DNA of 57,753 nucleotides, counting the filler, from Sluysia triapertura (Eukaryota), in the NCBI GenBank assembly GCA_046118255.1. It is 4 parts of 4 records of this genome, joined end to end, with 100 filler letters (N's around TTAATTAATTAA, not from the genome) between each part and the next. Parts side by side here need not be neighbours in the genome. Positions count along the whole stretch, not along the records: positions 13,600 to 26,409 come from JBJNIA010080707.1; 3 more parts are not named here. The stretch is one strand, 5' to 3'. Shown one piece after another: positions 13,600-26,409 of the stretch; the stretch's first letter is position 1; each line of letters begins with the position of its first letter. Both the position numbers and the translations under genes were made by a program. The notes below the pieces were generated by a model that ran no database searches, was not told the DNA's origin, and saw nothing but the letters and a program-made list of their open reading frames with translations.

Positions 13600-14235
13600 A
13601 TTCTTGTTCAAAGTCGAACTTTTGGTTAACATCATCGAATGTTTATCATCAATTTCAACAGAACCGCCTTCATTAATTATTTCATCTGAAATATCAATTA
13701 ACAAAGCATTTTGTTGTTTAGCAACTTCTGTTGCTACAATTTCATCATAATTATATTTCACTTTATTGCCCCAACCATTAAATCCAAACTGCACAACAAA
13801 TAATTTATTATTAGTATTATTTCGAACATATATAGGACCAACATCACGTGCCCACACATCATTGTATTTTATGATATAAAAATCAATATTACGCATTGAC
13901 ATTTTTTCTTTTAACAATTTTATAGCACGTTTTTTAACTTTATCATCATGAACAATCAAATGAACCTTTTCACTCTCAACTAAAACTCGTGTCATTTCGA
14001 CCCATGTAGGTTCGATATTATTTCTATAAGGTAGACCATATGTGTATTCGTGCGGCCATATTAACCAAGTACCTTCATGCTCTTCTTTCTCATCTGGAAA
14101 AGTATACAAAATAAAGGTACTTTTATCTTCAACGGTATCTTTTTCAACAACGGTACTTGTTTCAACAACAATAATAATAATTACTATTACAACAATAATA
14201 GTCAATAATAGAAAAATTATTGAATTTTGTTTCAT
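13600..14235 (-). CDS. Agmatine deiminase / Porphyromonas-type peptidylarginine deiminase family protein with N-terminal hydrophobic leader; 3' end lost at contig end
   Basis: FPDEKEEHEGTWLIWPH, DVWARDVGP, FNGWGNK, EGGSVEID and LTKSSTLNKN match the ordered PAD_porph/AguA motifs (P.E...H..TW..WP, D.W.RD.GP, FN.WG, EGG, LN.NR). The frame is uninterrupted from the ATG at 14235 (MKQNSIIFLLLTIIVVIVIIIIVV) to the gap. Confidence 0.92.
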
Positions 14236-15359
14236 TAAGTGAATAGTAATCAAATGATTGAATTTTTGAACGACCAAGGATAAATATATATGTATATTTT
14301 AAATGATGGTGTGCATCATGATACTAATTTTAGTACTAATGTATTTTCTGCAATCATGAAATTAAAAATATTGCATCGCATGTATTAATATGTAATCATA
14401 ATATTAATAAACTTTATACAATTAAAACAGTGTATAAATCTAATAACGGAAGAATTTTAAGTAAAATTAAAAATGAAACCGAATATGCTACATTTAATTA
14501 GTTAATTGGAATAAACAATAGTAAGTACGAAAAAAGTAAAATTCTATTAATATAAAAATGCTGAAATAATTAATAAGCAGAAATCAATAGATAACTTCAA
14601 AATAGTTAAATTCATAGTTAAATTTTGTTTTAATCGTTTATTAATCTATATTTAATTAAGCGATTTTAGATGATCCCTTTTTATATTATATTATTACGAT
14701 TCATCTTTTATATCTCTGGGCATTTACAAAAATAAACATATATCTTAAATCATATTTAATAAATATTAAACAAAATTATGTTGCTGATAAGATTATTTAT
14801 GATTTTTTTATCAAAGGATGTTATTGTAAGAATGTTATTATGTTATTATGCAAAAGATGGTTTTAGTGTTTCTGCAATCTCTTCCCATTATAAAAAATTA
14901 ATTAAAACTTTAATTAAATTGAGATAATTTTAAAATACATTAAAAGACAATTCAACAAATTGCAGAATAAACAAAATTCAATTAAATAAATAAATAGGAA
15001 ATTCACTAAATTAAATGTATTATTTATTTTTGTAAATACTAAGCACTTAATGAAGTATTATATAAATAGGAGTAAATTTTATACAAGGTGCACAATAAAT
15101 TGTACAACTACTACAAGTAAGACGTCAAGATAATTTTGCTAAATTGGAAACTCGAGTTACATACTGTGATAATGAATACATCAAAATTTCACGTCCTATC
15201 CGGGATTGCAGAAGCAGATTTTTGATTTATAAATTTATAAGTTTATTATTAATAAGACTGCTCTACTTAAACTTGTAATTATTTCGACGGTTTGGTTTAA
15301 ACTAATCAAAAAATCTAATTAAAATATGCAATAAATTGTGTTTTATTGTAACAAATATT

Positions 15360-15360
15360 A

Positions 15361-15405
<45 letters not shown>

Positions 15406-15428
15406 GTTGTTGCTGTTGTTGTTGTTTC
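15360..15428. repeat. (ATT)n/(GTT)n microsatellite
   Basis: Trinucleotide run seen directly. Confidence 0.95.
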
Positions 15429-15485
15429 TAGTTTTCAAACTGACCTTCATTCAAACTAATTCGATATAAAACATGTAGTGTAGAT

Positions 15486-15681
15486 CATGGTTTCTCAACC
15501 GTTGGGTCGTGTTCCAGTATACATAATGTAATATATTATAATATAAATAGAAAATAAAAAGAATTAATTTATACAATCAAAACGTTAATTAGCACCAATA
15601 GTATATGTCTTTTTTATTTCTTAGCATTCCTTTATGTAATAAAAAAATTGGGCCGCGGGGTAAAAAGGTTGAAAAACGTTG
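15486..15681. mobile_element. Short hAT/Charlie-type MITE
   Basis: TIRs CATGGTTTCTCAACC / GGTTGAAAAACGTTG, subterminal GGGTCG and GGGCCGCG, and a degenerate 8-bp TSD GTGTAGAT / GTATAGAC. Confidence 0.8.
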
Positions 15682-17087
15682 GTATAGACGAATCCACTAT
15701 AATATGTTGCTTAACAAATTAAACTATGAAAAACGTAGCAGTTGTTTATCTTACAAATTGTCGCAAAGTTCTTACTCAATGATAAATGAGTAAAATATCG
15801 AATTACAAGGTCAACTTTTTACAATTTCGAATTTTTCTTTTATACGTCTCAAGAATTATAAATTGTTTCGAGGTAAAAGTTAAAACCTTCTTTGAGGTTC
15901 AAAAGGACAATACTAGTGTGGTGACCAACCCATTACTTTGTATCAACAAGATATAACAAAATTACTTTTCAAAACATTTCATAATTGTTAATACTTGCAA
16001 ACATTACAAACATAAAATTTCACAATATCAAAATCATATTCGACATCGAAACCATCAAACATATACTTAAAAATTAATTCACAACATATCACACATAAAA
16101 CCAAATTCCACAACATTTTACTTATTTTATTATCAAAACCTTTTTCAAATTTTGTTTCTTTCAGATCCACTAAAACTAGTCTTATTTCAAAACCATTAAT
16201 ACACATTAAATCTTATTCAAAACATTTTAATTCAAAAGTTTTCAACATCCAAACCATAATTACATTCAATGTACATTAAAAACTCTTTTAAAACATTTAG
16301 TCATTATCCTATAAGATTAGAACTACAATTATATCTTAAGTCATTAAATGTCTATTCAAATATTAATACAAAACTCTTCAATTTTACAATCCAATAACAC
16401 TCATCATTATCACTAGTAAAAAAACATTAAATTCACATTTTCAAAACGGAATTTCTGTAACATCTTAGGTCGTTAACTTTATAAAAATTCTCGTTTTCAT
16501 ATAACAAGATCAATAACAGAAATAAGAGTTATAAGAAGAAAGTTCATGTTATAAGTAATATTAATATTAATATTATTTAATTATCAGTTGACTAATCAAT
16601 TTACATTTGTAACTGCCAATAATTGATAGTTTTAATTTAAATAAAACTGTTTCATATCTAGTGAGGTGTCTGAGTCATCCGTTTCGGAAAATTCAATACT
16701 ACAATTTTCGATAATTATTTTACAAAATCAAAACCATATAAGACGAGTGTTTTAAAGCACTTCAGTAAACAAAATGCGATCATTGTGATTTTAATACATC
16801 ACATCAATTAACGAATTCATTGGAATTTAAAACAATTTCAATGTAAAGAATGTGCATAAAACAACATTGTTTTCATTCAAAACTACTTCATCAGAAATTC
16901 GACGTTAGCCATGCTGTAATTGTTTCGGTACTTTCGATATAACAAGTTAAGGGTTACGAAATACAGTGTGACAAAATAAATAAATATTTACCTACGCAAA
17001 ATCAAAATTTATGGAAATCTAAAGTAAATTTGACCCAAGAAGCGCTACACATTGTATGTTTTTTAGATGCAGTCACTGTATTGATAC

Positions 17088-17139
17088 ACCCCCGAGCCAT
17101 GAACTCTGTCTAACAATTTTATTATAGTTAATTATACTA
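17088..17139 (-). repeat. Truncated second copy of the tRNA-derived repeat
   Basis: GAGCCATGAACTCTGTCTAACAATTTTATTATAGTTAATTATACTA parallels 12949-12999 GAGCTATCAGCTCCGTCTAACAATTTTGTTTTATTATAGTCAATTATACTA. Confidence 0.7.
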
Positions 17140-19792
17140 TCATTATTCTAAATGGCACTTTAGGCCTTTACCTCAACTTAAAGAAAATAAATAATCGCTT
17201 TAGCCTCAGTGTTTCTTAAGCACATATTTCAACGAAGTAATAACATCGGTAACATTTGTTTCAAAGTCACAAATAGTTCTAAAATAGTTTGAGGGCAATG
17301 ATTCAAATCCAATTTATTTGAAATTTATTATTGGTTTATTTAACTTTTATTTAAATTAATTATTAAATCAAATAAATATTTATAAAATTATAAATCATAA
17401 TAAAATAATAAATATATTTTAAATAAATATAGAAAAATCTTAATTATCTTAAAATAAAATTATAAATAAAAAATAAATCTAGAATATTTTAGTAATTTTA
17501 AAGAAATATATTAAAATAATCTGAAATCAAAACGTAAACAAAAGAAAACCAAAACTAGAATACAAGAAACATCGAGGTCAATTCATCTTACTTAATTATT
17601 AAGTCAAAAAAGAGTACGAATTATATGGTAGCTTCAAAATAACGAAAAAATATGTAATTCAATCAATATAAATATGAAGAAATACATGAATATGAATGTA
17701 TTTGTGAATCCATACATTATTATCTTAATTTAGCCATTCTATCGCCATTACATGAAAAATGAAATTTAGTTAATAATATGAAATTGACCAAATAATTGGA
17801 TTGGTTATACTGAAAAATACTAATTAAATAATATATAAAATACAAATTTGGACTGATATAATAAGATTACTCGTATTTTTTGTTGATGTTGACCTCATTT
17901 ATACCATTATTGAATTCTATTTCATAATATAACTTAGTGTATTTAGTTAGTTAGTTCACTTTCTGAGTATAGATAGCTAAAGATATTAATTGACAAAAAT
18001 TATTTAATTTATAAAGCGATTCTTCTACAGCAAAATAAAATTGAGCAGTAAACGTCTCAGTGACTAACACTAAGTTAATTTTAATGTAAGATCGTGAAAT
18101 AAAACAATTTATCCAATTAATGTAATTAAAATGAGAAACTGAGGAATGTTTATATAAATTATATCATCAAACCAATAATGAATAAAGAAAAGATCAGTTA
18201 CTGGATCAAGTTATTGAAATATCTATCATTTTAAAATCGGGGTTTCGAAAATTAATTTAAGTGTATTTTGTTTCATTTTTTTAGGTTGAAACCTTCTTAC
18301 AATAATAAACCTTACCAAATAACTGAAAAAATGATTAGGATAAATCCTTTAAAACTGTCAAATTGTATCAGATTTAAGACAATAAACTGTCTTCATGCGG
18401 AATACTGCGTCAATAAAACCACGTCAATAAACGATGAAGCGATTGAAATTACAATTAAGATAATGATATTGTGTTCACATAAGATTTGTAAAAACTAAAT
18501 TTTGACAATGAATTTTGTTTGCATAAAATTGCATGAACAAAATTGTGAATTGTAATTGAACTGATGCTAGTTTAGGTGGAATGCATCATTCTAGAACATT
18601 CTAAAAGCTTCTATTTTATTTTTAGAAGTTTATTTTCTTTTTTGGAAAAATAAATATTTTTTTGTTATTTCGATGCTTGAAAAAATTATTTTTTAAATAA
18701 ATTTAAAGTTTTTTTTTTGATGACATTTTATATAATTTTAGAGGATTGTGATGACAACCTAACAAATAGAAATCTAAAATTAAAGAAACATTTACCATAT
18801 GATAAAATAAATAATTTCATTGCAACTTTAATATTATTATATGATGTATTCAAAGTATAATAAATTAAGTATAAGATATTCGGTAATCACATTGAAATAA
18901 ATCATCATTAAAGACTTACGCTTACCTTTATTTAGATTCAGTGTTCAGTACTCTTATATTACAAACACGATTGTTATAATAGTTCATTAAACATTAAACA
19001 CATTTTCTGTAATTCGATATCAATGTGGTGTCATTTTGCTGTCTTTAAACTCAGTCAGAATTTACGAATTATATGTAAATAATTTTGACTATCAGTCGGT
19101 CTATTAATATTCAACATAAAGCAAAAATTAATATTAAAAACAAATTCATAATAAATTATATTATATTATAATTATAATTTTAGTTATTGAGAAACATTAC
19201 TTTTATTTTTGTTTTTGAATTATTAAAATTATTAAAATTATGTTTTATTATATCAAGATCATTCATAATTTATGAAAATTGTTTGACACTTTCTCGCTGT
19301 TATTCTCAAAGTATTTTTTAATCTGAAACGGCACCGTTCTTCGAGATCAAGAAACATGAATCTTGGCTTTTCAAACAACAGCAAGTAGTTTATGAATATC
19401 GTGTAAATTGAAGAGAATTGAGACATTTATATTTTAAAAAACATTTCAGAGACGAAGGTTTTTTTTGTTACTTAGTTCATTTTTACATATAAAACATAAT
19501 TTTATCTACATGTTTGATGTAGACAGAACTTTGTACTTGTAAAATTAAATAAAATTATATAAATTATTGATTTAATTTCAATTTTAAATGCATTATTTTA
19601 TCGAATTATTTAATTTTTCAATTAATTAGTTTTCAATAGGTTTTTTTATTGCATTAACATGTTGAGGAATTTCATATAATATTGGTATAATTATAGGTAT
19701 AAATCATCTTGATGTTGTATGGAAGAAAACATAACAAATAAAAGTTTAAGGATTATAACTAGACGATTTGTCCCAAGGCGAAGCAAGATATA

Positions 19793-20302
19793 TAGTGATG
19801 GCTTAATTATTAGACTAAAACAGGAAAAATATACCATAGAAAATCTGTGGAAGATTGTCAAAAGGAGAGTTTCTAGCCATAAACCAACCACCAGGACGGA
19901 ACTTATTGAAACCCTGATAAAAGTGTGGCATCACGATGACGATATCAAAGACGTGTGCCCTAAGCTCATTCGTGACATGCGCATTTAAGGATCAGGAAAT
20001 TATTGGATAATAAACGAGGGCAAAGAAAGTATTAAATAAAAGTGTGTCCATATTTGATTCGTAGTAAATTGTGTTATCACATTCTACATGAATAAAAATT
20101 CTGTATGTTTTGGATCTCAGTATTTTTATCTATTATTTTACTTTCACCAGAATTTTTCGGAGAAAATAGTTATTTTCCAACATTTTACATTTTCCGTGAC
20201 AATGTTTTTATACACTTTTGATTAATATTTTCACCGTATCCTTGAAAAATGTTGAATTTTATCACAAAAATGGTCTCTAGTCTAATAATTTGGCCACCAC
20301 TG
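19793..20302 (+). mobile_element. Internally deleted Tc1-like transposon, copy 1
   Basis: TIRs TAGTGATGGCTTAATTATTAGACTA / TAGTCTAATAATTTGGCCACCACTG; retains the transposase C-terminus IENLWKIVKRRV...TTRTELIETLIKVW; homologous to 47205-47744. Confidence 0.9.
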
Positions 20303-20349
20303 CAAATTTTATAACATTAAAATGAACTATATAGTACAATAATTTATAC

Positions 20350-20650
20350 GAAATAAAATTGGCAGTACGGAAAACACCTTCCCTTGTTTCAAATCAATAT
20401 AATACTTCGACTGAATCTTGAGTATAGTTCATAGAAATAATCTCTAGATGATTCAATTTCTCCAGTTGTAATCTATTAGCGAATAACTGTAAAAAATCTT
20501 TAGTAAAGGAAATCGTTGCTAACACAGAATACATCCAGCTTTAAGTAAACTTTTAACATGTGCCTCAATTTTTAATAATCAAGAATGGCTATTATCTTTA
20601 AATGATCTATCACGATTTGGAAACATGTGTGTATAAGGGTTGTCGACAGA
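20350..20650 (-). mobile_element. Degenerate Gypsy reverse-transcriptase N-terminal remnant
   Basis: Broken frames give KIEAHVKSLLKAGCI, IDY, KLN and LKQGKVFSVL in the expected RT order. Confidence 0.4.
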
Positions 20651-21050
20651 TTAACGTCTTATTTGTTTCTTATTTGGATTCTATTATTAGAGTAATGTTC
20701 ATAATCTATAAACATATACGTAATACGTAACATTAAGATCTTTATTTATCGTTTTCGATAAGCACAGAATGAATATAGCCTACTTTTTTTTAGATTTGAT
20801 CATTGATTTCGCTATTAACATGATTCGAAACTATTTCTTCGAAACGTTTTCTTCGGCTTTTCCATCTTTGTTGCCACCTTTTTGGCAGAATTATTTCGAG
20901 TAGACTGATTTGAGAATTGGATACTAAGTATTGACTAAATAATCCTGATACAGACATTTTGAAACGGATTGAGGATTATGTTTTGCTGTTGGATTGCTCG
21001 TTATAGAATTGGAACGAAAGTCTTGTCCGACAGAAAATATTTATTTAACC

Positions 21051-21597
21051 CAAAAGCACGCAAATTAGGGGGCGCAAAAAACGTTAAAATTGTTAGATTT
21101 TACAAACAAAATTTTGTTTTTTCTTTTGTTATTCTTTGTTGTTTTTTACCAATTCAAGTAATTCCATCATCTTGATGTAGAACAATCATAGAAAATTCAT
21201 ACATCTGCACTAGAGATGTTATGCTATTTAGTATTCTGCTATATTTTAGCTGTTAATTAAAAATAACGTTAGCAGATTGCTACGACAATCGCGAAATAGC
21301 AGCTATTAAATAACGACGTGTTGAAAAAATATTAATATTAATATTAACAGACATAATATTGCATTTTTGATATAAAGAATTAAAATTTAATTTTGTTAAT
21401 TTTTCTTTATTTTTGCTAAAGAATTAGAACTGTTGTTTTAATAGTAGTTAATTTATTTAATTTATAAGAAACAGAAAAATACCATTTCTTATTAATAAGA
21501 AGTTTATTTTATTTATGAAGTTTTTTATAGTGGCATTATGATTTTGGAGGCGCCAAAAGTAAATATGTTGAAATGGGGGGGTGCAACTTAAAAAGGT
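21051..21597 (+). mobile_element. hAT MITE family B, copy 2
   Basis: Extensive identity to 12285-12791 (GTTAGATTTTACAAAC, TCAAGTAATTCCAT, GCACTAGAGATGTTATGCTATTT, TGATATAAAGAATTAAAATTTAATTTTGTTAATTTTTCTTTATTTTTGCTAAAGAA); termini decayed. Confidence 0.9.
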
Positions 21598-22027
21598 ATA
21601 TGGTATCGGTTTTTTGTTTTATGATTCTGCAATGAAGTTTTGCTGTGATTATTGTGGTAATTTATAAGATTTAAAATTTTTAATTTTATTATATTGCTAA
21701 GATAATACAATTTTACCTATTGTAGTAACGAGAAAGATTTTTATTTAAATTTAGTAGAAATCTAGAAACTTCAGACAAACGAAAATATTAACAAAATTTT
21801 TATTAGGATTAATTAAAAGATAAACATTCGTTTTTATGTTCTTATTTTGATTATGCCATCCCGAACGTGTTTTCGATTCACTTCGTAAAAGATTCTAAAG
21901 AAAATAAAATAATGTAAATATGTTTTAATGTTACTAATAAAGTTAATAATCAAGTTAAAATTAAGAATTAAGTGATGATGATTGTTACTATCGAATGGCC
22001 TTGTGTTCAGTGATGATATCGATTGCT

Positions 22028-22745
22028 TTATTCTATTGATATGATCCACTCAGATGTCGTCTGAGAATTCGGTTGCATTGTGTACATTACACATTCTCCC
22101 TTTCGAGTAGTTGCATATAAACACAAGCCGGATTTATCGTCCAATTCTGATCGTATTAATGGCATCATGTTAGCATCAAATTGAATGCTATGCTCTCTTA
22201 GAGAATATTCTTGTTTAATATCTGGTGCTCCTAATAATTTCAATGGTTCGCATCGACACATTTGTAATTGATTATGTTGAATTCTTTTTTTACTTTTAAC
22301 ATAATGAAGTCAACTTATAGAAATTTTAATGTCATATTCATATTATTTTTATTAAACTAATAACACATAATAAATAAGTCGTTATTACTGAACTTTAAAC
22401 ATTTTAAACTAATTTCTAACTCTTTTTCATTAATAATAATTAGTCTTAAAAAAGAGCATCATTTTTCTGTAAGTCTAAGTAAAACTCACAAGCGAGAAGA
22501 AATTTCGTGTATCTTTACGGAAAAGTGGTTCAACGACTCTGTTGCCAAGTAATTTGATTGGATGATAATTAAGACCAGTTATTTCTTGATAGCTGTAAAA
22601 CTAGTGGAATTAACATTTCTGAGTTCTGTGTGGATCGTTCTAACCACTATATCTATAAACTTTGATTTTGAAAAACTCGTACTTTGTACTTTTCCGCTTG
22701 ATGAAATTTTGATAACCTCTATTCCGAGATGATGACAATGTAGTG
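22028..22745 (-). pseudogene. Possible WD40-repeat gene fragment (two exon-like pieces, frameshifted)
   Basis: About 22490-22600 gives QEITGLNYHP and, in a shifted frame, SNYLATESLNHFSVKIHEI (WD40-like), ending at a GTGAGT donor near 22490; downstream ORF 22028..22261 looks coding. Confidence 0.4.
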
Positions 22746-24303
22746 ATTATCGTCATACTTTTGTGTGTGTGTAATTTTTTCTTTCATTTTCTTTTTTTTC
22801 TTTCAAGAACTTTTTTGTGTTACACTCATCACATTTTTATTTTCGTAACTTTTTAATTGGATCATAGATTTGTTGTCTGATCGTGTTGAATAATTATTTG
22901 CACACAATGCAAGAGGACAAAGTGTATACTAGTAATTATCTTGACAGCCATTGTGATTTTTACATGTAATTTTAATTAGCAAATTTATTATTGTCATCAT
23001 TAAAATATAATTTTTTTATTTTTCAATTTCTTGGTATTATTATCAAAATTCGAAAATTGTGGATAAATAGGTTTATGAGTACATAAAATTTTCGTGGAAA
23101 TAATGTATTAAAATTGAGGGGTGAATAAATAAATCGTGGAAGGATTGATTTGAAAATATAGAAGTGTTAAAATGAAGTGTTGAAAATGTTTGTGAGTTGC
23201 GAAGTTGTTATTGGTGAGTTGAGTTTTCTGAAAATATTAAGTGTTTGTTGTATACTGTGATGGGTTTTATGAATTATTGATTGTATCATGTGATGTATTT
23301 AAAGATTGTGCATTTGTGTTGAGCAGATAGTTTGTGGAATTGAGTGAATTAAAGTTGGGTTACAACATGAATATTTAGAAAATATTTGAGGACTATATTT
23401 TGCAAAAGATGATAAAAAAAACAAGAAAATTAAATGTCGGATAAAGTTTTATTTCTTTAAGACTATTAAATTTTAATACTTCTTTTATGATTGTTATCAA
23501 AAGTATTTTCTATAAATAAATGTGTTACTAAAAATAGAATGTGTTACTATTTTTAGTAATAAAATTGAAATTGTATAATTGAGATAAAAAATCATTATAA
23601 ATAATTAATTCTTGTTTATTTGTTGTATTATTACTTGAGAAAAGTGTAAGAAAACGATTTTATTGTTATATTAATGTATTTATAATTAATTATTTTCTTG
23701 GAATAAAATTTTAGTTATTGATTATTATTATTATTACTATTATTATTGTTTATTTTATTGATTTTGTGATTATTATAATATATTTTGAAAATAAAAGGAT
23801 TGTTCTTGATAATAAATTAGTTTACAATCCTTTATAAATTAATAAAGTGTTATGAAGAAAACAGTAATTTATTTCAGATATAAGAATATAAAAAATTGAT
23901 GTGTTATTCTACTTTCAATAGACAGTAGATCTTTTAAGCTATTTTTGAAATAAATATTTATATGCAAACATTCGCCAGAATAAGCAATAATCACAGATAG
24001 TTTCTGGTGAAAGAAAAAATACATTTTAACATTTAACCCCTTGAGTGGAGATGACTGGCCTTGCCCGCAGTGTATTTTCATGTTTAAAAACCATATGGAT
24101 TTCTTTGAATATGTAAAAATAAAAATATTATTATTGTTGTACATGGTCTTTTATATATATTCTAGCTAAAGTGGCTTCGAAAAGTATCCTACATTCTTCA
24201 AGATTATTAGTTGTAATAATAATAATTTTAATTATAATTATAATTATAATATATTAATTTATATTGTGCTCATATATACTGCAAAGTAAGTACTCAAAAG
24301 TGC

Positions 24304-24745
24304 TTAAAATAAATCATAATATTTCTGAAACAGAAAGAACTTTGCTTTTTTCTTAAGTATTTCATAACCTTCCACTAATTTGACATTCTCTGGTAACAGG
24401 TTGTATATTTTTGAGACATAAATGGTGTATAACCTATCACCTAGCTTACTATCACTGTGGATTCTGTATAGATTATTATGTCTCAACTAAATATTCATTT
24501 TGGCTTCCAATTGTTTTATTATTTCTAAAAGATATTCAGGACTTCCGTAATGTAAGCATTTGTAAATTATTGTCATCTTTTTGAATTCTATTCTTGCTTT
24601 TATTGGCAACCAATGTAATTCTTTAAGATAAGGTGTTATATGAGATCTTCTTACAACTTGGAGAATTAGTCTTGCTGCTTTATTAATTATTAATTGTATT
24701 TTTTTCACTTTTCTATATGAAATTGACTACAATAAAATCTGTGAA
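24304..24745 (-). mobile_element. CR1/L2-type non-LTR retrotransposon ORF2 3' end (5'-truncated)
   Basis: KIQLIINKAARLILQVVRRSHITPYLKELHWLPIKARIEFK and IYNLLPENVK...KKK.K..LF are typical post-RT C-terminal motifs; in-frame TAG at 24487; second copy at 57609-57753. Confidence 0.88.
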
Positions 24746-25654
24746 TAAACAATAAGTTTAGCTGTTTCTTTATTAATAAATTTTTGAATATTTGATACAA
24801 TCAAAATTAATATAAATATTCCTAAAATATTCACCTAATTATTCAAATATTACGGCTTTTGTATGACATTCATTGTTTGTTTGTCATAAACTGATAAAAT
24901 TGTATTTTTAAGCAAAATTAAAATTCAAAATTATTCATAGTAAAAACTGAACCAATAAAAATTAATATTTATACTAAAAGTATCATTCTGATACTATAAT
25001 TTAGATTAAATAATAATTATTGAGATTAAATATTGAAATAAGGTTCAAATTACAAATAAATTAAAAGTGCATATCATATATAATAATTGTATAAGAGTAA
25101 TCTGATTAAATATTTATCATTGTTGTTCATCATTATTTAATAGACTAATCAAAAATCTATTTGAAACATAGAATATGGCGTTTCTGAGAGTAGCCGAAAT
25201 ATTATTTAAACAAAGAGAAATTTTAATAAAGAAATATTTTTAAAACTATTTCGAAGAACAAAATGATTCATAGAATTTCTACTTAATGAAAACATCAAAT
25301 GGATTATTTTATTGGTTACAAAACAAAGAGAACTAATCATAATCATAATCATAATGAATTTTATTTAAAATTTCAATAAAATGAGGAGTTATTAAAATAT
25401 AGAGTTTTCAATCAAAGTGAATTAGAATAACAAATTAAGGATAAAATTTTCAGGTTATGAAAAAAGTTTTATTTAAAAATCATTATATCTGGCAAAATCC
25501 ATTTTAAGTTCATTTTCATTTTTATTACAACAACGAATAACAAAATTTGGAATAAACTATTATGTAACCTAGTATGTCTATAGGACGAGCAAATGAAGAA
25601 GGAAGGGAAAATAGCACAGAAGAAAGAAAGCCTAGCAAGTTATAAAGCTTGATG

Positions 25655-26165
25655 AAGTCGAAGAATTGTGGGCGCTACTGGAATGCCTAAGTCTACTGTC
25701 AATAGAATCCTAAAAGATTTCAGTCTAAACATTACATCACAAATGGGAAGCATGGTGGAGATAGATCCTTTCCAAAAATGGAGTTGAAAATGATGATTGA
25801 TGATAATAGGATTGAATTTCACCACGATGTTCAGATTAGTACCGCAACTTCCACTACACCCTTAAGTCTATTGTATTAGTTCCTGAACCTATAAATTAGC
25901 CTGATTCGTCGAACTTCGTTACAATTATGCCGTGCAATAGCGAAATTTAGAAATAAACGTTGGTAATAGTAGACTGATTTTTCTAGATGTAACGACAAGG
26001 CCTAAGTGTGGACGTGCTTGTGTTCCTGTTAGTGCTGCAATAAGTCATATCTTCACTGTGATTGAAGCCATGAGCATGTATGGCATAATTTACTATACAA
26101 TCTTCATTTCTGAAGTGAATGAAGAACTGTTCAAAGATACACTGATGGAAATGTTGGGATTAGTG
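25655..26165 (+). mobile_element. Tc1/IS630-like transposase remnant
   Basis: IVGATGMPKSTVNRILKDF (HTH-like) and later FTVIEAMSMYGIIYYTILISEVNEELFKDTL (DDE_3-like segment), with stops and frameshifts between them. Confidence 0.55.
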
Positions 26166-26409
26166 AAGGATAAGGGTTGATATAAGGGTCAAAACTTGGA
26201 ATAATATGATAAGTAGAGCGTTGTTGAGGAACTAAGATAGGGTATTGTGATGAACTCTAATGGTGGGATAGGCATATAAAATACTTAAATTAAGATAAAA
26301 TAACGAAACAATACAAAGAAATAAACCGTTACAGGGTTTTATCTGCTAAAATATTAAAGTACATTTGTTAATTAATTTAATTATAATTTGTTTAATTTCA
26401 TAACTCAAT

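What the first reader, a model, noticed from the sequence alone, without database searches (positions are those of the whole stretch)
13600..14235. Bacterial-type agmatine deiminase with a secretion/anchor leader integrated in an animal-like genome (candidate HGT)
Seen: an intact, intronless 212-codon frame with PAD_porph/AguA motifs and AT-rich codons like its surroundings. It shares a gap-free contig (13600-26409) with hAT MITEs, a Tc1 and a CR1/L2 LINE whose families recur on other contigs here, which argues against a contaminant contig. No flanking bacterial operon genes are evident. Established: this family converts agmatine to N-carbamoylputrescine plus ammonia (Porphyromonas PPAD citrullinates peptides), and it is typical of bacteria, plants and some viruses rather than animals. 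Inference: a horizontally acquired, possibly secreted deiminase acting on extracellular agmatine or peptidyl-arginine. From memory, the 'HEGTWL.WPH.Y.YG..YR' segment resembles signal-bearing Bacteroidota homologues, which needs a search. The catalytic His and Cys should lie in the missing C-terminal half, so activity cannot be judged here.
Basis: partly seen in the sequence, partly recalled or inferred. Interest (0 to 1): 0.8.

Follow-up and report, generated by a model that had tools for sequence, protein, structure and literature searches.

The report
Bacteroidota-type deiminase gene in eukaryote DNA
The first half of a bacterial-type (Bacteroidota-like) agmatine-deiminase-family gene sits, intact and reshaped to the host's AT-rich style, in otherwise gene-poor, transposon-littered eukaryotic DNA, so it is a credible but still incomplete case of a gene passed from bacteria to a eukaryote.

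Summary
On the minus strand, 14235 to 13600, there is an open 212-codon frame that runs off the piece's edge. Residues 46-212 match Pfam PAD_porph (E 2.5e-35, profile positions 2-154 of 321).

All close relatives are bacterial, at 44-55% identity. They are mostly Bacteroidota lipoproteins or T9SS-secreted proteins. In a careful ML tree the frame falls in a 96/96-supported clade whose labelled members are all Bacteroidota.

The other 12.2 kb of the piece looks eukaryotic:
- GC is 25% and no open stretch exceeds 93 codons.
- There are no remnants of bacterial neighbour genes.
- It carries a Tc1-like and a CR1/L2-like remnant, and repeats present at very high depth in the same sequencing run.

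The gene shows long residence in AT-rich DNA (GC3 20%; more FYMINK residues than any of 80 relatives) and constraint (chance of staying open about 7e-10). The bacterial lipobox cysteine is gone. In its place is a 20-residue Ile/Val core encoded by (ATT)n(GTT)n-like simple sequence, a likely signal anchor.

Horizontal transfer is therefore supported. Still open are substrate (family level only), catalytic integrity (the His/Asp/Cys half is missing), expression, host identity, and independent proof of linkage. This is a new member of a known kind, of moderate interest.

The parts
13600..14235 (-). Open 212-codon frame: the N-terminal half of a PAD_porph (agmatine deiminase family) protein, cut by the piece's edge at 13600
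   Evidence: Translation. Pfam PF04371 E 2.5e-35. PDB relatives 1xkn, 6b10, 2jer, 3hvm and 1vkp. Collinear alignment to bacterial relatives.
14164..14223 (-). Codons 5-24, SIIFLLLTIIVVIVIIIIVV: hydrophobic core of the leader, a likely signal anchor or uncleaved signal peptide, encoded by (ATT)n(GTT)n-like simple sequence
   Evidence: Mean Kyte-Doolittle hydropathy 3.71. The uncharged run is 20 residues against a median of 11 in bacterial relatives, and the fragment has no Cys. It takes the place of the lipobox signal peptide of the relatives. The simple-sequence arm pairs with the microsatellite at 15354-15412.
13600..14100 (-). Residues 46-212: the first half of the pentein-fold catalytic domain
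   Evidence: Pfam match to profile positions 2-154 of 321. 48 of 65 columns that are at least 95% conserved in 80 bacterial relatives are retained.
13843..13854 (-). W128-A-R-D131, the conserved W-x-R-D motif. From established knowledge of the family, its Asp binds the guanidinium group.
   Evidence: W128, R130 and D131 are invariant columns in alignment A1. Read directly from the sequence.
13663..13671 (-). E189-G-G191, the conserved EGG motif
   Evidence: Invariant columns in A1.
14236..14300 (-). 5' flank: an in-frame stop at 14278-14280 and a TATA-like 'tatatattta' about 50 nt upstream of the ATG. In 20% GC DNA this is only an observation.
15354..15424 (+). (ATT)n(GTT)n microsatellite, the same simple sequence that encodes the leader core (in inverted orientation)
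   Evidence: I1: 59 nt, 75% complementary.
19719..19988 (+). Tc1-like transposase C-terminal remnant (context: eukaryotic mobile element)
   Evidence: Atlas look-alikes score 0.91, with 76 of 100 hits in the DDE_3/Tc1 set, from eukaryotes. The Pfam scan was not significant.
24304..24708 (-). CR1/L2-like LINE ORF2 tail with one internal stop (context: 5'-truncated retroelement)
   Evidence: Translation shows HITPYLKELHWLPIKARIEFK ... GDRLY ... LLPENV. Atlas look-alikes score 0.93 and are eukaryotic, most often Cnidaria. The family assignment comes from memory of the L2/CR1 tail motif.
15570..18918 (.). Several high-copy repeat segments (15570-15766, 15964-16357, 16949-17342, 18525-18918) that tie the piece to the main genome of the run
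   Evidence: Summed contig depth is 4,000-24,800, against about 24-38 for single-copy bins.

Best explanation
This is the 5' half of a gene that a eukaryote with a very AT-rich, transposon-rich genome acquired from a bacterium. The donor was most likely a member or close relative of the Bacteroidota clade of exported (lipoprotein or T9SS) agmatine-deiminase-family proteins.

Since the transfer the gene has stayed open and has been remodelled:
- Its codons and amino-acid composition have drifted to the host's AT bias.
- The bacterial lipobox cysteine was lost.
- The signal peptide's hydrophobic core was lengthened to 20 Ile/Val/Leu residues, probably by slippage of (ATT)/(GTT) triplets.

The inferred product is a type II membrane-anchored or secreted pentein-fold guanidino-group hydrolase, with its catalytic domain facing the lumen or the outside. 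It most likely deiminates agmatine or a similar free guanidino compound to N-carbamoylputrescine plus ammonia, through a Cys thiouronium intermediate.

Shown: family membership, bacterial affinity, an intact constrained frame, compositional adaptation, and eukaryote-like surroundings. Inferred: topology, substrate, activity (the catalytic His/Asp/Cys lie beyond the piece's edge) and expression.
For: - Family: PF04371, E 2.5e-35. PDB hits are to characterised agmatine deiminases (2jer, 3hvm, 6b10, 1vkp); no PPAD chain appears at E<=1e-3.
- Bacterial affinity: the best hits in the 5.8-billion-cluster collection are 44-52% identical, and every named one is Bacteroidota. The exhaustive search of 1.84 billion representatives found nothing closer. 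Hit contexts are gene-dense bacterial contigs with T9SS tails or lipoboxes. 541 loci were found in GTDB genomes, and 76 of the best 80 are Bacteroidota.
- Tree: in the careful ML tree the query lies inside a 96/96* clade of 34 rows whose labelled rows are all Bacteroidota.
- Eukaryotic residence: flank GC is 25%, the longest open stretch is 93 codons, and 1204 bacterial neighbour ORFs give only chance-level tblastn hits. Tc1-like and L2-like remnants are present. Repeats on the same piece reach depth up to about 24,800 in the run.
- Depth: exact contigs over the ORF (25-33) are within about 2-3x of unique flank contigs (8-18).
- Constraint and adaptation: P(open by chance) is about 7e-10, and 48 of 65 highly conserved columns are kept. 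Among copies in the run, 5 of 9 differences are synonymous and the indel pair keeps the frame. GC3 is 19.8%. FYMINK is 38.4%, above all 80 relatives, and GARP is 14.0%, below 79 of 80.
- Leader.
Against: - Only half the gene is present, so catalytic residues, a stop codon and a poly(A) signal cannot be checked.
- No RNA run holds the stretch.
- Physical linkage rests on the assembly. The only run that holds the stretch is probably its own source, and its contigs are short: one of 202 nt crosses the start codon, and a 149-nt interval has no long exact contig listed.
- Some bacterial homologues are equally AT-rich (gene GC 28-30%, GC3 13-15%), so composition alone does not prove amelioration.
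- The query is a long branch (1.13 against a median of 0.21), and its position inside the clade is unresolved.
- A quick tree paired it with a diatom sequence, and the AU test does not reject that grouping (p 0.21).
- 17 of 65 highly conserved positions have changed, for example DWGFNGWG to QFGFNGWG and EIDGxG to EIDDKH. This could mean relaxed constraint or a new specificity.
- Neither the fragment nor its relatives reach the AguA equivalog cut-off.
Confidence: 0.66

Rival explanations
1. Dead or truncated relic of a horizontal transfer. The DNA is integrated in the eukaryote, but this copy, and perhaps all copies, is a fragment or pseudogene without a working C-terminal half, and it is not expressed.
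For: The frame ends at the piece's edge, so half the gene is unseen. Summed depth over the ORF (137-144) is about 4-5 times that of single-copy bins, and variant letters are present. This suggests several copies, some of which may be fragments that break assemblies. The branch is long and 17 of 65 conserved positions have changed. No RNA evidence exists.
Against: 212 codons stay open in DNA where a stop is expected about every 11 codons (P about 7e-10). Invariant motifs are retained: HEGTWL, WxRD, FNGWG and EGG. Differences between copies are mostly synonymous or conservative. The leader looks adapted rather than decayed.
Confidence: 0.18
2. Contaminant or chimeric assembly. The 636 bases come from an AT-rich bacterium, such as a Bacteroidota symbiont or food organism, and were joined to host DNA by mistake at the end of a contig.
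For: The bacterial-like part lies at the extreme end of the piece and is cut mid-gene. Some relatives have similar GC (28-30%). Linkage is not independently verified.
Against: A 202-nt contig of the run crosses from the ORF into the 20% GC non-coding flank, and coverage continues from there. No bacterial gene, promoter-proximal neighbour or any ORF follows in 12.2 kb. Nothing above 55% identity exists among about 15 billion proteins, most of them bacterial or metagenomic. The lipobox Cys typical of the clade is missing, and the leader is made of the host's own type of microsatellite. Several diverged copies sit at host-like depth. The amino-acid composition lies outside the range of 80 bacterial relatives.
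Confidence: 0.08
3. Not a direct bacterium-to-host transfer. The gene belongs to an older eukaryotic lineage of exported PAD_porph proteins shared with diatoms, reached either vertically or by eukaryote-to-eukaryote transfer.
For: Diatom transcripts P0056 and P0309 (Nitzschia, MMETSP0014) and the eukaryote-like contig L093 encode secreted homologues. They share RDVGP, FYIIxY, YTYG and IEPxWVEMT with the query. The quick tree paired the query with P0056 (SH-aLRT 84). The AU test does not reject that clade (p 0.213).
Against: With better sampling, the careful tree puts the diatom group in a separate 99/94* clade beside Lysobacter-like sequences and puts the query in the 96/96* Bacteroidota clade. 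Identity to the diatom proteins (41-46%) is lower than to Bacteroidota (up to 55%). The query shares the INEGGSVEID insertion state and ILYT with Bacteroidota. Two long branches attract each other.
Confidence: 0.07

Closest known systems
Bacteroidota 'agmatine deiminase family protein' lipoproteins and T9SS-secreted forms (e.g. Flavobacterium, Pedobacter, Chitinophaga, Ferruginibacter, Saprospiraceae; P0001, P0002, P0016, L015)
   Same: Same Pfam domain and collinear alignment, at 44-55% identity. The consensus HEGTWLQWPHEYQYG, WxRD, FNGWG and INEGGSVEID are shared. An N-terminal export signal sits at the same place. Same clade in the tree, 96/96.
   Different: The query lacks the lipobox Cys. 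It has a 20-residue Ile/Val core instead of an h-region of about 11 residues. Its branch is about five times longer, 17 of 65 highly conserved positions are changed, and its amino-acid composition is more AT-driven than in any of the 80 relatives. It lies in non-coding, transposon-rich DNA rather than a gene-dense bacterial contig. The substrate of the bacterial clade itself has not been tested, as far as these tools show.
Characterised agmatine deiminases / AguA (EC 3.5.3.12): Enterococcus faecalis 2jer, Helicobacter pylori 3hvm, Campylobacter 6b10, Arabidopsis AIH 1vkp
   Same: Same pentein-fold family. The N-terminal motifs align over residues 44-212.
   Different: Distant: 29-54 bits, and 70 bits to Chlorobium 1xkn. 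The known enzymes are cytosolic and have no leader. The TIGR03380 equivalog cut-off is not reached by the fragment (70 against 381.8) or by its full-length relatives (179-206).
Porphyromonas gingivalis PPAD (secreted peptidyl-arginine deiminase, same Pfam family)
   Same: Exported member of PF04371 from Bacteroidota; T9SS-tailed relatives of the query exist.
   Different: No PPAD chain was among the PDB matches at E<=1e-3. The query keeps the FNGWG loop typical of the agmatine-type branch. That reading of the loop's role is from memory, not tested.
Diatom secreted PAD_porph proteins (P0056; P0309 from Nitzschia MMETSP0014; P0310 on contig L093)
   Same: Eukaryotic, intronless or mRNA-borne, with a signal peptide in front of the same domain; of bacterial ancestry.
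   Different: They fall in a different bacterial neighbourhood (Lysobacter-like; 99/94 clade) and have about 47% GC, with a Ser/Thr-rich linker instead of a membrane-anchor-like core. The best tree shows an independent acquisition, though a shared origin is not rejected.
Vertebrate PADI citrullinating enzymes acquired from cyanobacteria (PMC8826395)
   Same: A precedent for a guanidino-modifying enzyme entering animals by horizontal transfer.
   Different: A different protein family (PADI, not PAD_porph), a different donor phylum, and intracellular calcium-dependent enzymes.

Membership tests
Pfam PF04371 PAD_porph (pentein-fold agmatine/peptidyl-arginine deiminase family) | Significant match to the family profile above the gathering score | tested here: met
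   122.7 bits against a cut-off of 25, E 2.5e-35, profile positions 2-154 of 321.
Pfam PF04371 PAD_porph | Conserved N-terminal motifs (W-x-R-D guanidinium-binding Asp; F-N-x-W-G; E-G-G) | tested here: met
   W128, R130, D131, F152-N-G-W-G156 and E189-G-G191 are invariant columns shared with 12 relatives.
Pfam PF04371 PAD_porph | Catalytic His/Asp (D-x-H-I-D-G) and nucleophile Cys (G-G-x-H-C) in the C-terminal half | not testable with these tools
   These motifs lie after column 260 of A1 in the relatives. The window's frame ends at residue 212, at the piece's edge.
AguA agmatine deiminase, NCBIfam TIGR03380 (equivalog, EC 3.5.3.12) | Whole-protein score at or above the curated cut-off of 381.8 bits | tested here: not met
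   The fragment scores 70.4 bits. The full-length nearest relatives score 179-206 bits. So the name holds at family level only.
Bacteroidota exported lipoprotein subclade of PF04371 | Placement inside the clade in an ML tree | tested here: met
   96/96* clade of 34 rows, all labelled rows Bacteroidota. The position within the clade is unresolved, and grouping with diatom sequences is not rejected (p 0.21).
Bacteroidota exported lipoprotein subclade of PF04371 | Lipobox with an acylated Cys at the end of the signal peptide | tested here: not met
   The 212 residues contain no Cys. The relatives show L-x-S-C or similar.
Horizontally transferred gene resident in a eukaryotic genome | Nearest relatives are from another domain, and vertical eukaryotic homologues are far more distant | tested here: met
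   Bacteroidota score about 200 bits and 44-55% identity, against 29 bits for Arabidopsis AIH.
Horizontally transferred gene resident in a eukaryotic genome | Physical linkage to bona fide host DNA, confirmed independently of the assembly | tested here: inconclusive
   The ORF shares a gap-free piece with Tc1-like and L2-like remnants and high-copy repeats. A 202-nt contig crosses the start codon, and depth is within 2-3x of the flank. Only one run holds the stretch, it is probably the assembly's own source, and no long read was seen.
Horizontally transferred gene resident in a eukaryotic genome | Adaptation to the host (composition, eukaryotic signals) and purifying selection | tested here: met
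   GC3 is 19.8% and FYMINK/GARP lie outside or at the edge of the range of the relatives. The frame is open with P about 7e-10, and 5 of 9 differences between copies are synonymous. Caveat: a few bacterial relatives are equally AT-rich.
Horizontally transferred gene resident in a eukaryotic genome | Transcription (poly(A)+ RNA) | not testable with these tools
   No RNA run holds the stretch.

The most novel reading that the evidence does not exclude
An animal (or other AT-rich eukaryote) has domesticated a Bacteroidota exported agmatine-deiminase-family gene and expanded it into a small family. It converted the bacterial lipoprotein signal into a eukaryotic signal anchor by triplet-repeat expansion of Ile/Val codons. 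The host thereby gained an ecto-enzyme that destroys or converts microbially produced agmatine or other guanidino compounds at its surface or in its gut. Such an extracellular polyamine or guanidine-handling activity has not been described in animals.
Probability: 0.3. Interest if true: 0.65.

Novelty: new member of a known kind. Interest (0 to 1): 0.45.

Why it matters
Transfers of bacterial genes into animals are known, but each well-supported case that is retained and remodelled shows how foreign genes become host genes. Two points are of interest here.

- The enzyme family. In the papers searched here I found no report of a Porphyromonas-type (PF04371) deiminase of the exported Bacteroidota clade in an animal-like genome. 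It would give the host an extracellular route for handling agmatine, a common product of bacterial arginine decarboxylation and a signalling and polyamine precursor.
- The leader. The bacterial lipoprotein signal appears to have been turned into a long Ile/Val membrane anchor made from the host's own (ATT)n/(GTT)n simple sequence. That is a concrete and testable route for making a bacterial export signal work in a eukaryote.

An apparently independent acquisition of the same family by diatoms, noticed here, suggests this exported enzyme is repeatedly useful to eukaryotes. The case is limited by the missing 3' half and the lack of expression data.

Tried and rejected
- Rfam and tRNA scans of 13600-26409 found nothing.
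- A Pfam scan of seven flank ORFs gave no significant family. The TE remnants are therefore supported only by Atlas look-alikes and motif reading.
- A search for MITE-like terminal inverted repeats in 15400-19400 found only AT-rich chance pairs, so the hAT MITE claim is unverified.
- tblastn of 1204 ORFs from the bacterial relatives' neighbourhoods against the flank gave only chance-level hits, so there is no sign of co-transferred genes.
- Two metagenome scans found no close relative and no source for the missing half: one with query peptides and one with a degenerate DNA pattern for TWLIWPH[EQ]YTYG.
- The viral-contig scan found one relative at 29% identity, so a virus-borne origin has no support.
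- Literature searches found no report of PF04371 or agmatine deiminase transfer into animals. The compendium's supplements are not held.
- The profile word search listed only the best 120 bacterial proteins, so it does not test for diverged eukaryotic orthologues longer than 371 aa. That gap is only partly closed by the exhaustive representative search.
- The quick tree's pairing of the query with diatom P0056 was not kept by the careful tree. It could not be rejected by the AU test either.
- Host identity is coded in the run table and could not be established.
- No structure prediction or complex prediction was run. Neither would change the verdict on a half domain.

Full report
**1. What is there**

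The finding's coordinates hold an open frame on the minus strand. The ATG is at 14235 and 212 sense codons run to 13600, where the piece ends. An in-frame stop lies 14 codons upstream of this ATG, and no other ATG lies between them.

Pfam places residues 46-212 on positions 2-154 of the 321-position PAD_porph profile (PF04371), with E 2.5e-35 and 122.7 bits against a cut-off of 25. Solved structures matched by sequence are all of the agmatine-deiminase type:
- Chlorobium 1xkn, 70 bits
- Campylobacter 6b10, 54 bits
- Enterococcus 2jer, 41 bits
- Helicobacter 3hvm, 39 bits
- Arabidopsis AIH 1vkp, 29 bits

No PPAD chain appeared at E<=1e-3. The alignment with relatives is collinear with only single-residue indels, so this half has no intron.

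**2. Who its relatives are**

The word-indexed search of 5.8 billion protein clusters gave 49 hits, the best at 44-52% identity. Every named hit is from Bacteroidota: Flavihumibacter, Flavobacterium, Pedobacter, Chitinophaga and Taibaiella. That search cannot see proteins longer than 371 aa, so I also ran the exhaustive search of 1.84 billion representatives. It returned 2382 hits, the best again only 44-51% identical. The named clusters among the ten best I looked up are Bacteroidota.

The contigs that carry the best hits are gene-dense bacterial DNA. Many of these proteins carry a T9SS C-terminal sorting domain or a lipobox. A scan of one genome per GTDB species found 541 loci, and 76 of the best 80 are Bacteroidota.

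Trees gave the following:
- A first quick tree put the query as a long branch next to the 80 Bacteroidota rows.
- A second quick tree with all representatives paired it with P0056. P0056 turned out to be a diatom transcript. Its 87%-identical relative P0309 is labelled Nitzschia, MMETSP0014.
- A careful tree had better sampling: 70 rows, 169 columns, LG+C20+F+G4, ultrafast bootstrap/SH-aLRT. It places the query inside a 96/96 clade of 34 rows whose labelled rows are all Bacteroidota.
- In that tree the diatom sequences, with P0310, form a separate 99/94 clade beside Lysobacter-like proteins.
- An AU test does not reject forcing query and diatoms together (delta lnL 12.3, p 0.21).

So a bacterial origin is well supported. 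A Bacteroidota-type donor is the best reading but is not proven. The query's end branch is about five times the median (1.13 against 0.21).

**3. Where it sits**

The remaining 12.2 kb of the piece is not bacterial:
- GC is 25.0%, falling to 19% in places.
- The longest open stretch in six frames is 93 codons, and there is no tRNA or Rfam match.
- 1204 ORFs taken from the bacterial relatives' neighbourhoods find nothing beyond chance.
- A Tc1-like transposase remnant lies at 19719-19988 (Atlas 0.91; 76 of 100 hits in the DDE_3 set; eukaryotes).
- A CR1/L2-like ORF2 tail lies at 24304-24708 on the minus strand.

In the only public run that holds the stretch, segments of the piece reach summed depths of 4,000-24,800, against about 24-38 for single-copy bins. 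The piece therefore carries repeat families of the dominant genome in that sample.

Exact contigs over the ORF have depth 25-33, and unique flank contigs have 8-18. A 202-nt contig runs from inside the ORF to 47 nt upstream of the ATG. This fits integration but is not independent proof. The run is probably the assembly's own source, its contigs are short, and no long read was seen.

**4. Signs of constraint and of long residence**

- From the ORF's own composition a stop is expected about every 11 codons, so 212 open codons have P about 7e-10.
- Of 65 columns that are at least 95% conserved among 80 bacterial relatives, the query keeps 48. These include HEGTWL, W-x-R-D, F-N-G-W-G and E-G-G. 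The 17 changes include DWGFNGWG to QFGFNGWG and EIDGxG to EIDDKH.
- Summed depth over the ORF (137-144) is 4-5 times single-copy depth, and variant letters are present. This suggests several copies or alleles at 90% identity or more.
- Of nine listed differences between copies, five are synonymous and four are conservative. One insertion/deletion pair four bases apart restores the frame.
- GC3 is 19.8%.
- The share of FYMINK residues (38.4%) exceeds all 80 relatives, and GARP (14.0%) is lower than in 79 of 80.

A few bacterial relatives are equally AT-rich at the DNA level, so composition supports but does not prove amelioration.

**5. The leader**

Bacterial relatives begin with a signal peptide of about 20 residues that ends in a lipobox Cys. 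The query has no Cys at all. It has a 20-residue uncharged core, SIIFLLLTIIVVIVIIIIVV (mean hydropathy 3.71), against a median run of 11 in the relatives. The core is preceded by Lys2 and followed by an acidic linker.

By the positive-inside rule this predicts N-in/C-out. That means a type II signal anchor or an uncleaved signal, with the catalytic domain in the lumen or outside. This is an inference, since no predictor was available.

The core is encoded by ATT/GTT/GTA triplets and pairs as an inverted repeat with the (ATT)n(GTT)n microsatellite at 15354-15412. That suggests lengthening by slippage of the host's commonest simple sequence. One N-x-T sequon is present, at N139.

**6. Function**

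The name 'agmatine deiminase' holds only at family level. The fragment scores 70 bits on the AguA equivalog model (cut-off 381.8). Its full-length bacterial relatives score only 179-206 bits, so the substrate of the whole exported clade is untested.

The catalytic His/Asp and Cys motifs lie in the missing half. My best reading is an exported guanidino-group hydrolase acting on agmatine or a similar free guanidino compound. Peptidyl-arginine is less likely, because no PPAD chain was among the PDB matches.

**7. Rivals**

- A dead or truncated relic is possible, because half the gene is unseen and no RNA data exist.
- A contaminant or chimera is unlikely for several reasons: the non-coding flank reached by a run contig, the lack of any close bacterial match among about 15 billion proteins, the lost lipobox, the host-type leader and the out-of-range composition.
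- A shared origin with the diatom genes is not rejected statistically, but it is not the best tree.
- A viral route has no support: the single viral relative is 29% identical.

**8. Novelty**

Transfer of bacterial enzymes into eukaryotes is a known kind of event. No paper in the searchable library reports this family in animals. No closer relative exists in the protein collections or JGI metagenomes.

I rate it a new member of a known kind, with moderate interest. The interest comes mainly from the remodelled leader and the possible extracellular handling of agmatine. It is tempered by the missing 3' half, the unknown host and the absence of expression and independent linkage data.

Noticed in passing
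L092:473-1810 (P0056), P0309, and L093:4841-6061 (P0310): Diatom transcripts encode signal-peptide-bearing PAD_porph proteins; P0309 is labelled Nitzschia, MMETSP0014. So does a eukaryote-like metagenome contig whose neighbouring gene has an HSF DNA-binding domain. They nest beside Lysobacter-like bacterial sequences (99/94 clade). This looks like an independent bacterium-to-stramenopile transfer of the same exported enzyme family.
   Followed up: partly
window 15570-15766, 15964-16357, 16949-17342, 18525-18918: These segments have summed contig depth of 4,000-24,800 in the run, against about 24-38 for single-copy bins. They are very high-copy repeat families. Sharp copy boundaries lie at 17116/17117 and 17176/17177. 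The loose-end consensus ACTGAGCTATCAGCCCCG... looks like a tRNA-derived SINE head (from memory). No terminal inverted repeats were found, so they are not shown to be hAT MITEs.
   Followed up: partly
window 15354-15424 and 14163-14221: An (ATT)n(GTT)n microsatellite lies 1.1 kb upstream of the gene. It is the reverse complement of the simple sequence that encodes the Ile/Val core of the leader. Similar ATT-rich tracts occur at 23721-23750 and 24199-24256.
   Followed up: partly
L001:6184-7329 and L001:8001-9116: In the Bacteroidota contig that carries P0002, two PAD_porph paralogues (381 and 371 aa) lie in tandem, separated by a 208-aa gene with no family match. They are followed by periplasmic-binding and ABC transporter genes, so the exported deiminases may belong to an uptake locus.
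   Followed up: no
window 25600-26200: A local GC rise to 37% contains short plus-strand ORFs with a helix-turn-helix-like stretch (STVNRILK; Pfam HTH hits only at E 0.03-0.3). This may be another degraded transposase.
   Followed up: no
window 22028-22261 (-): A 77-codon ORF in a slightly GC-richer stretch (about 29-30%) has only a faint zf-CCCH_UNK hit (E 0.075). It could be a host exon or a chance frame.
   Followed up: no
window 13705-14053: Contigs of the run show nine substitutions and one frame-preserving indel pair (14030/14034) within the ORF. Summed depth is about 4-5 times single-copy, which suggests a small family of paralogues or divergent alleles of this gene in the same sample.
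   Followed up: partly
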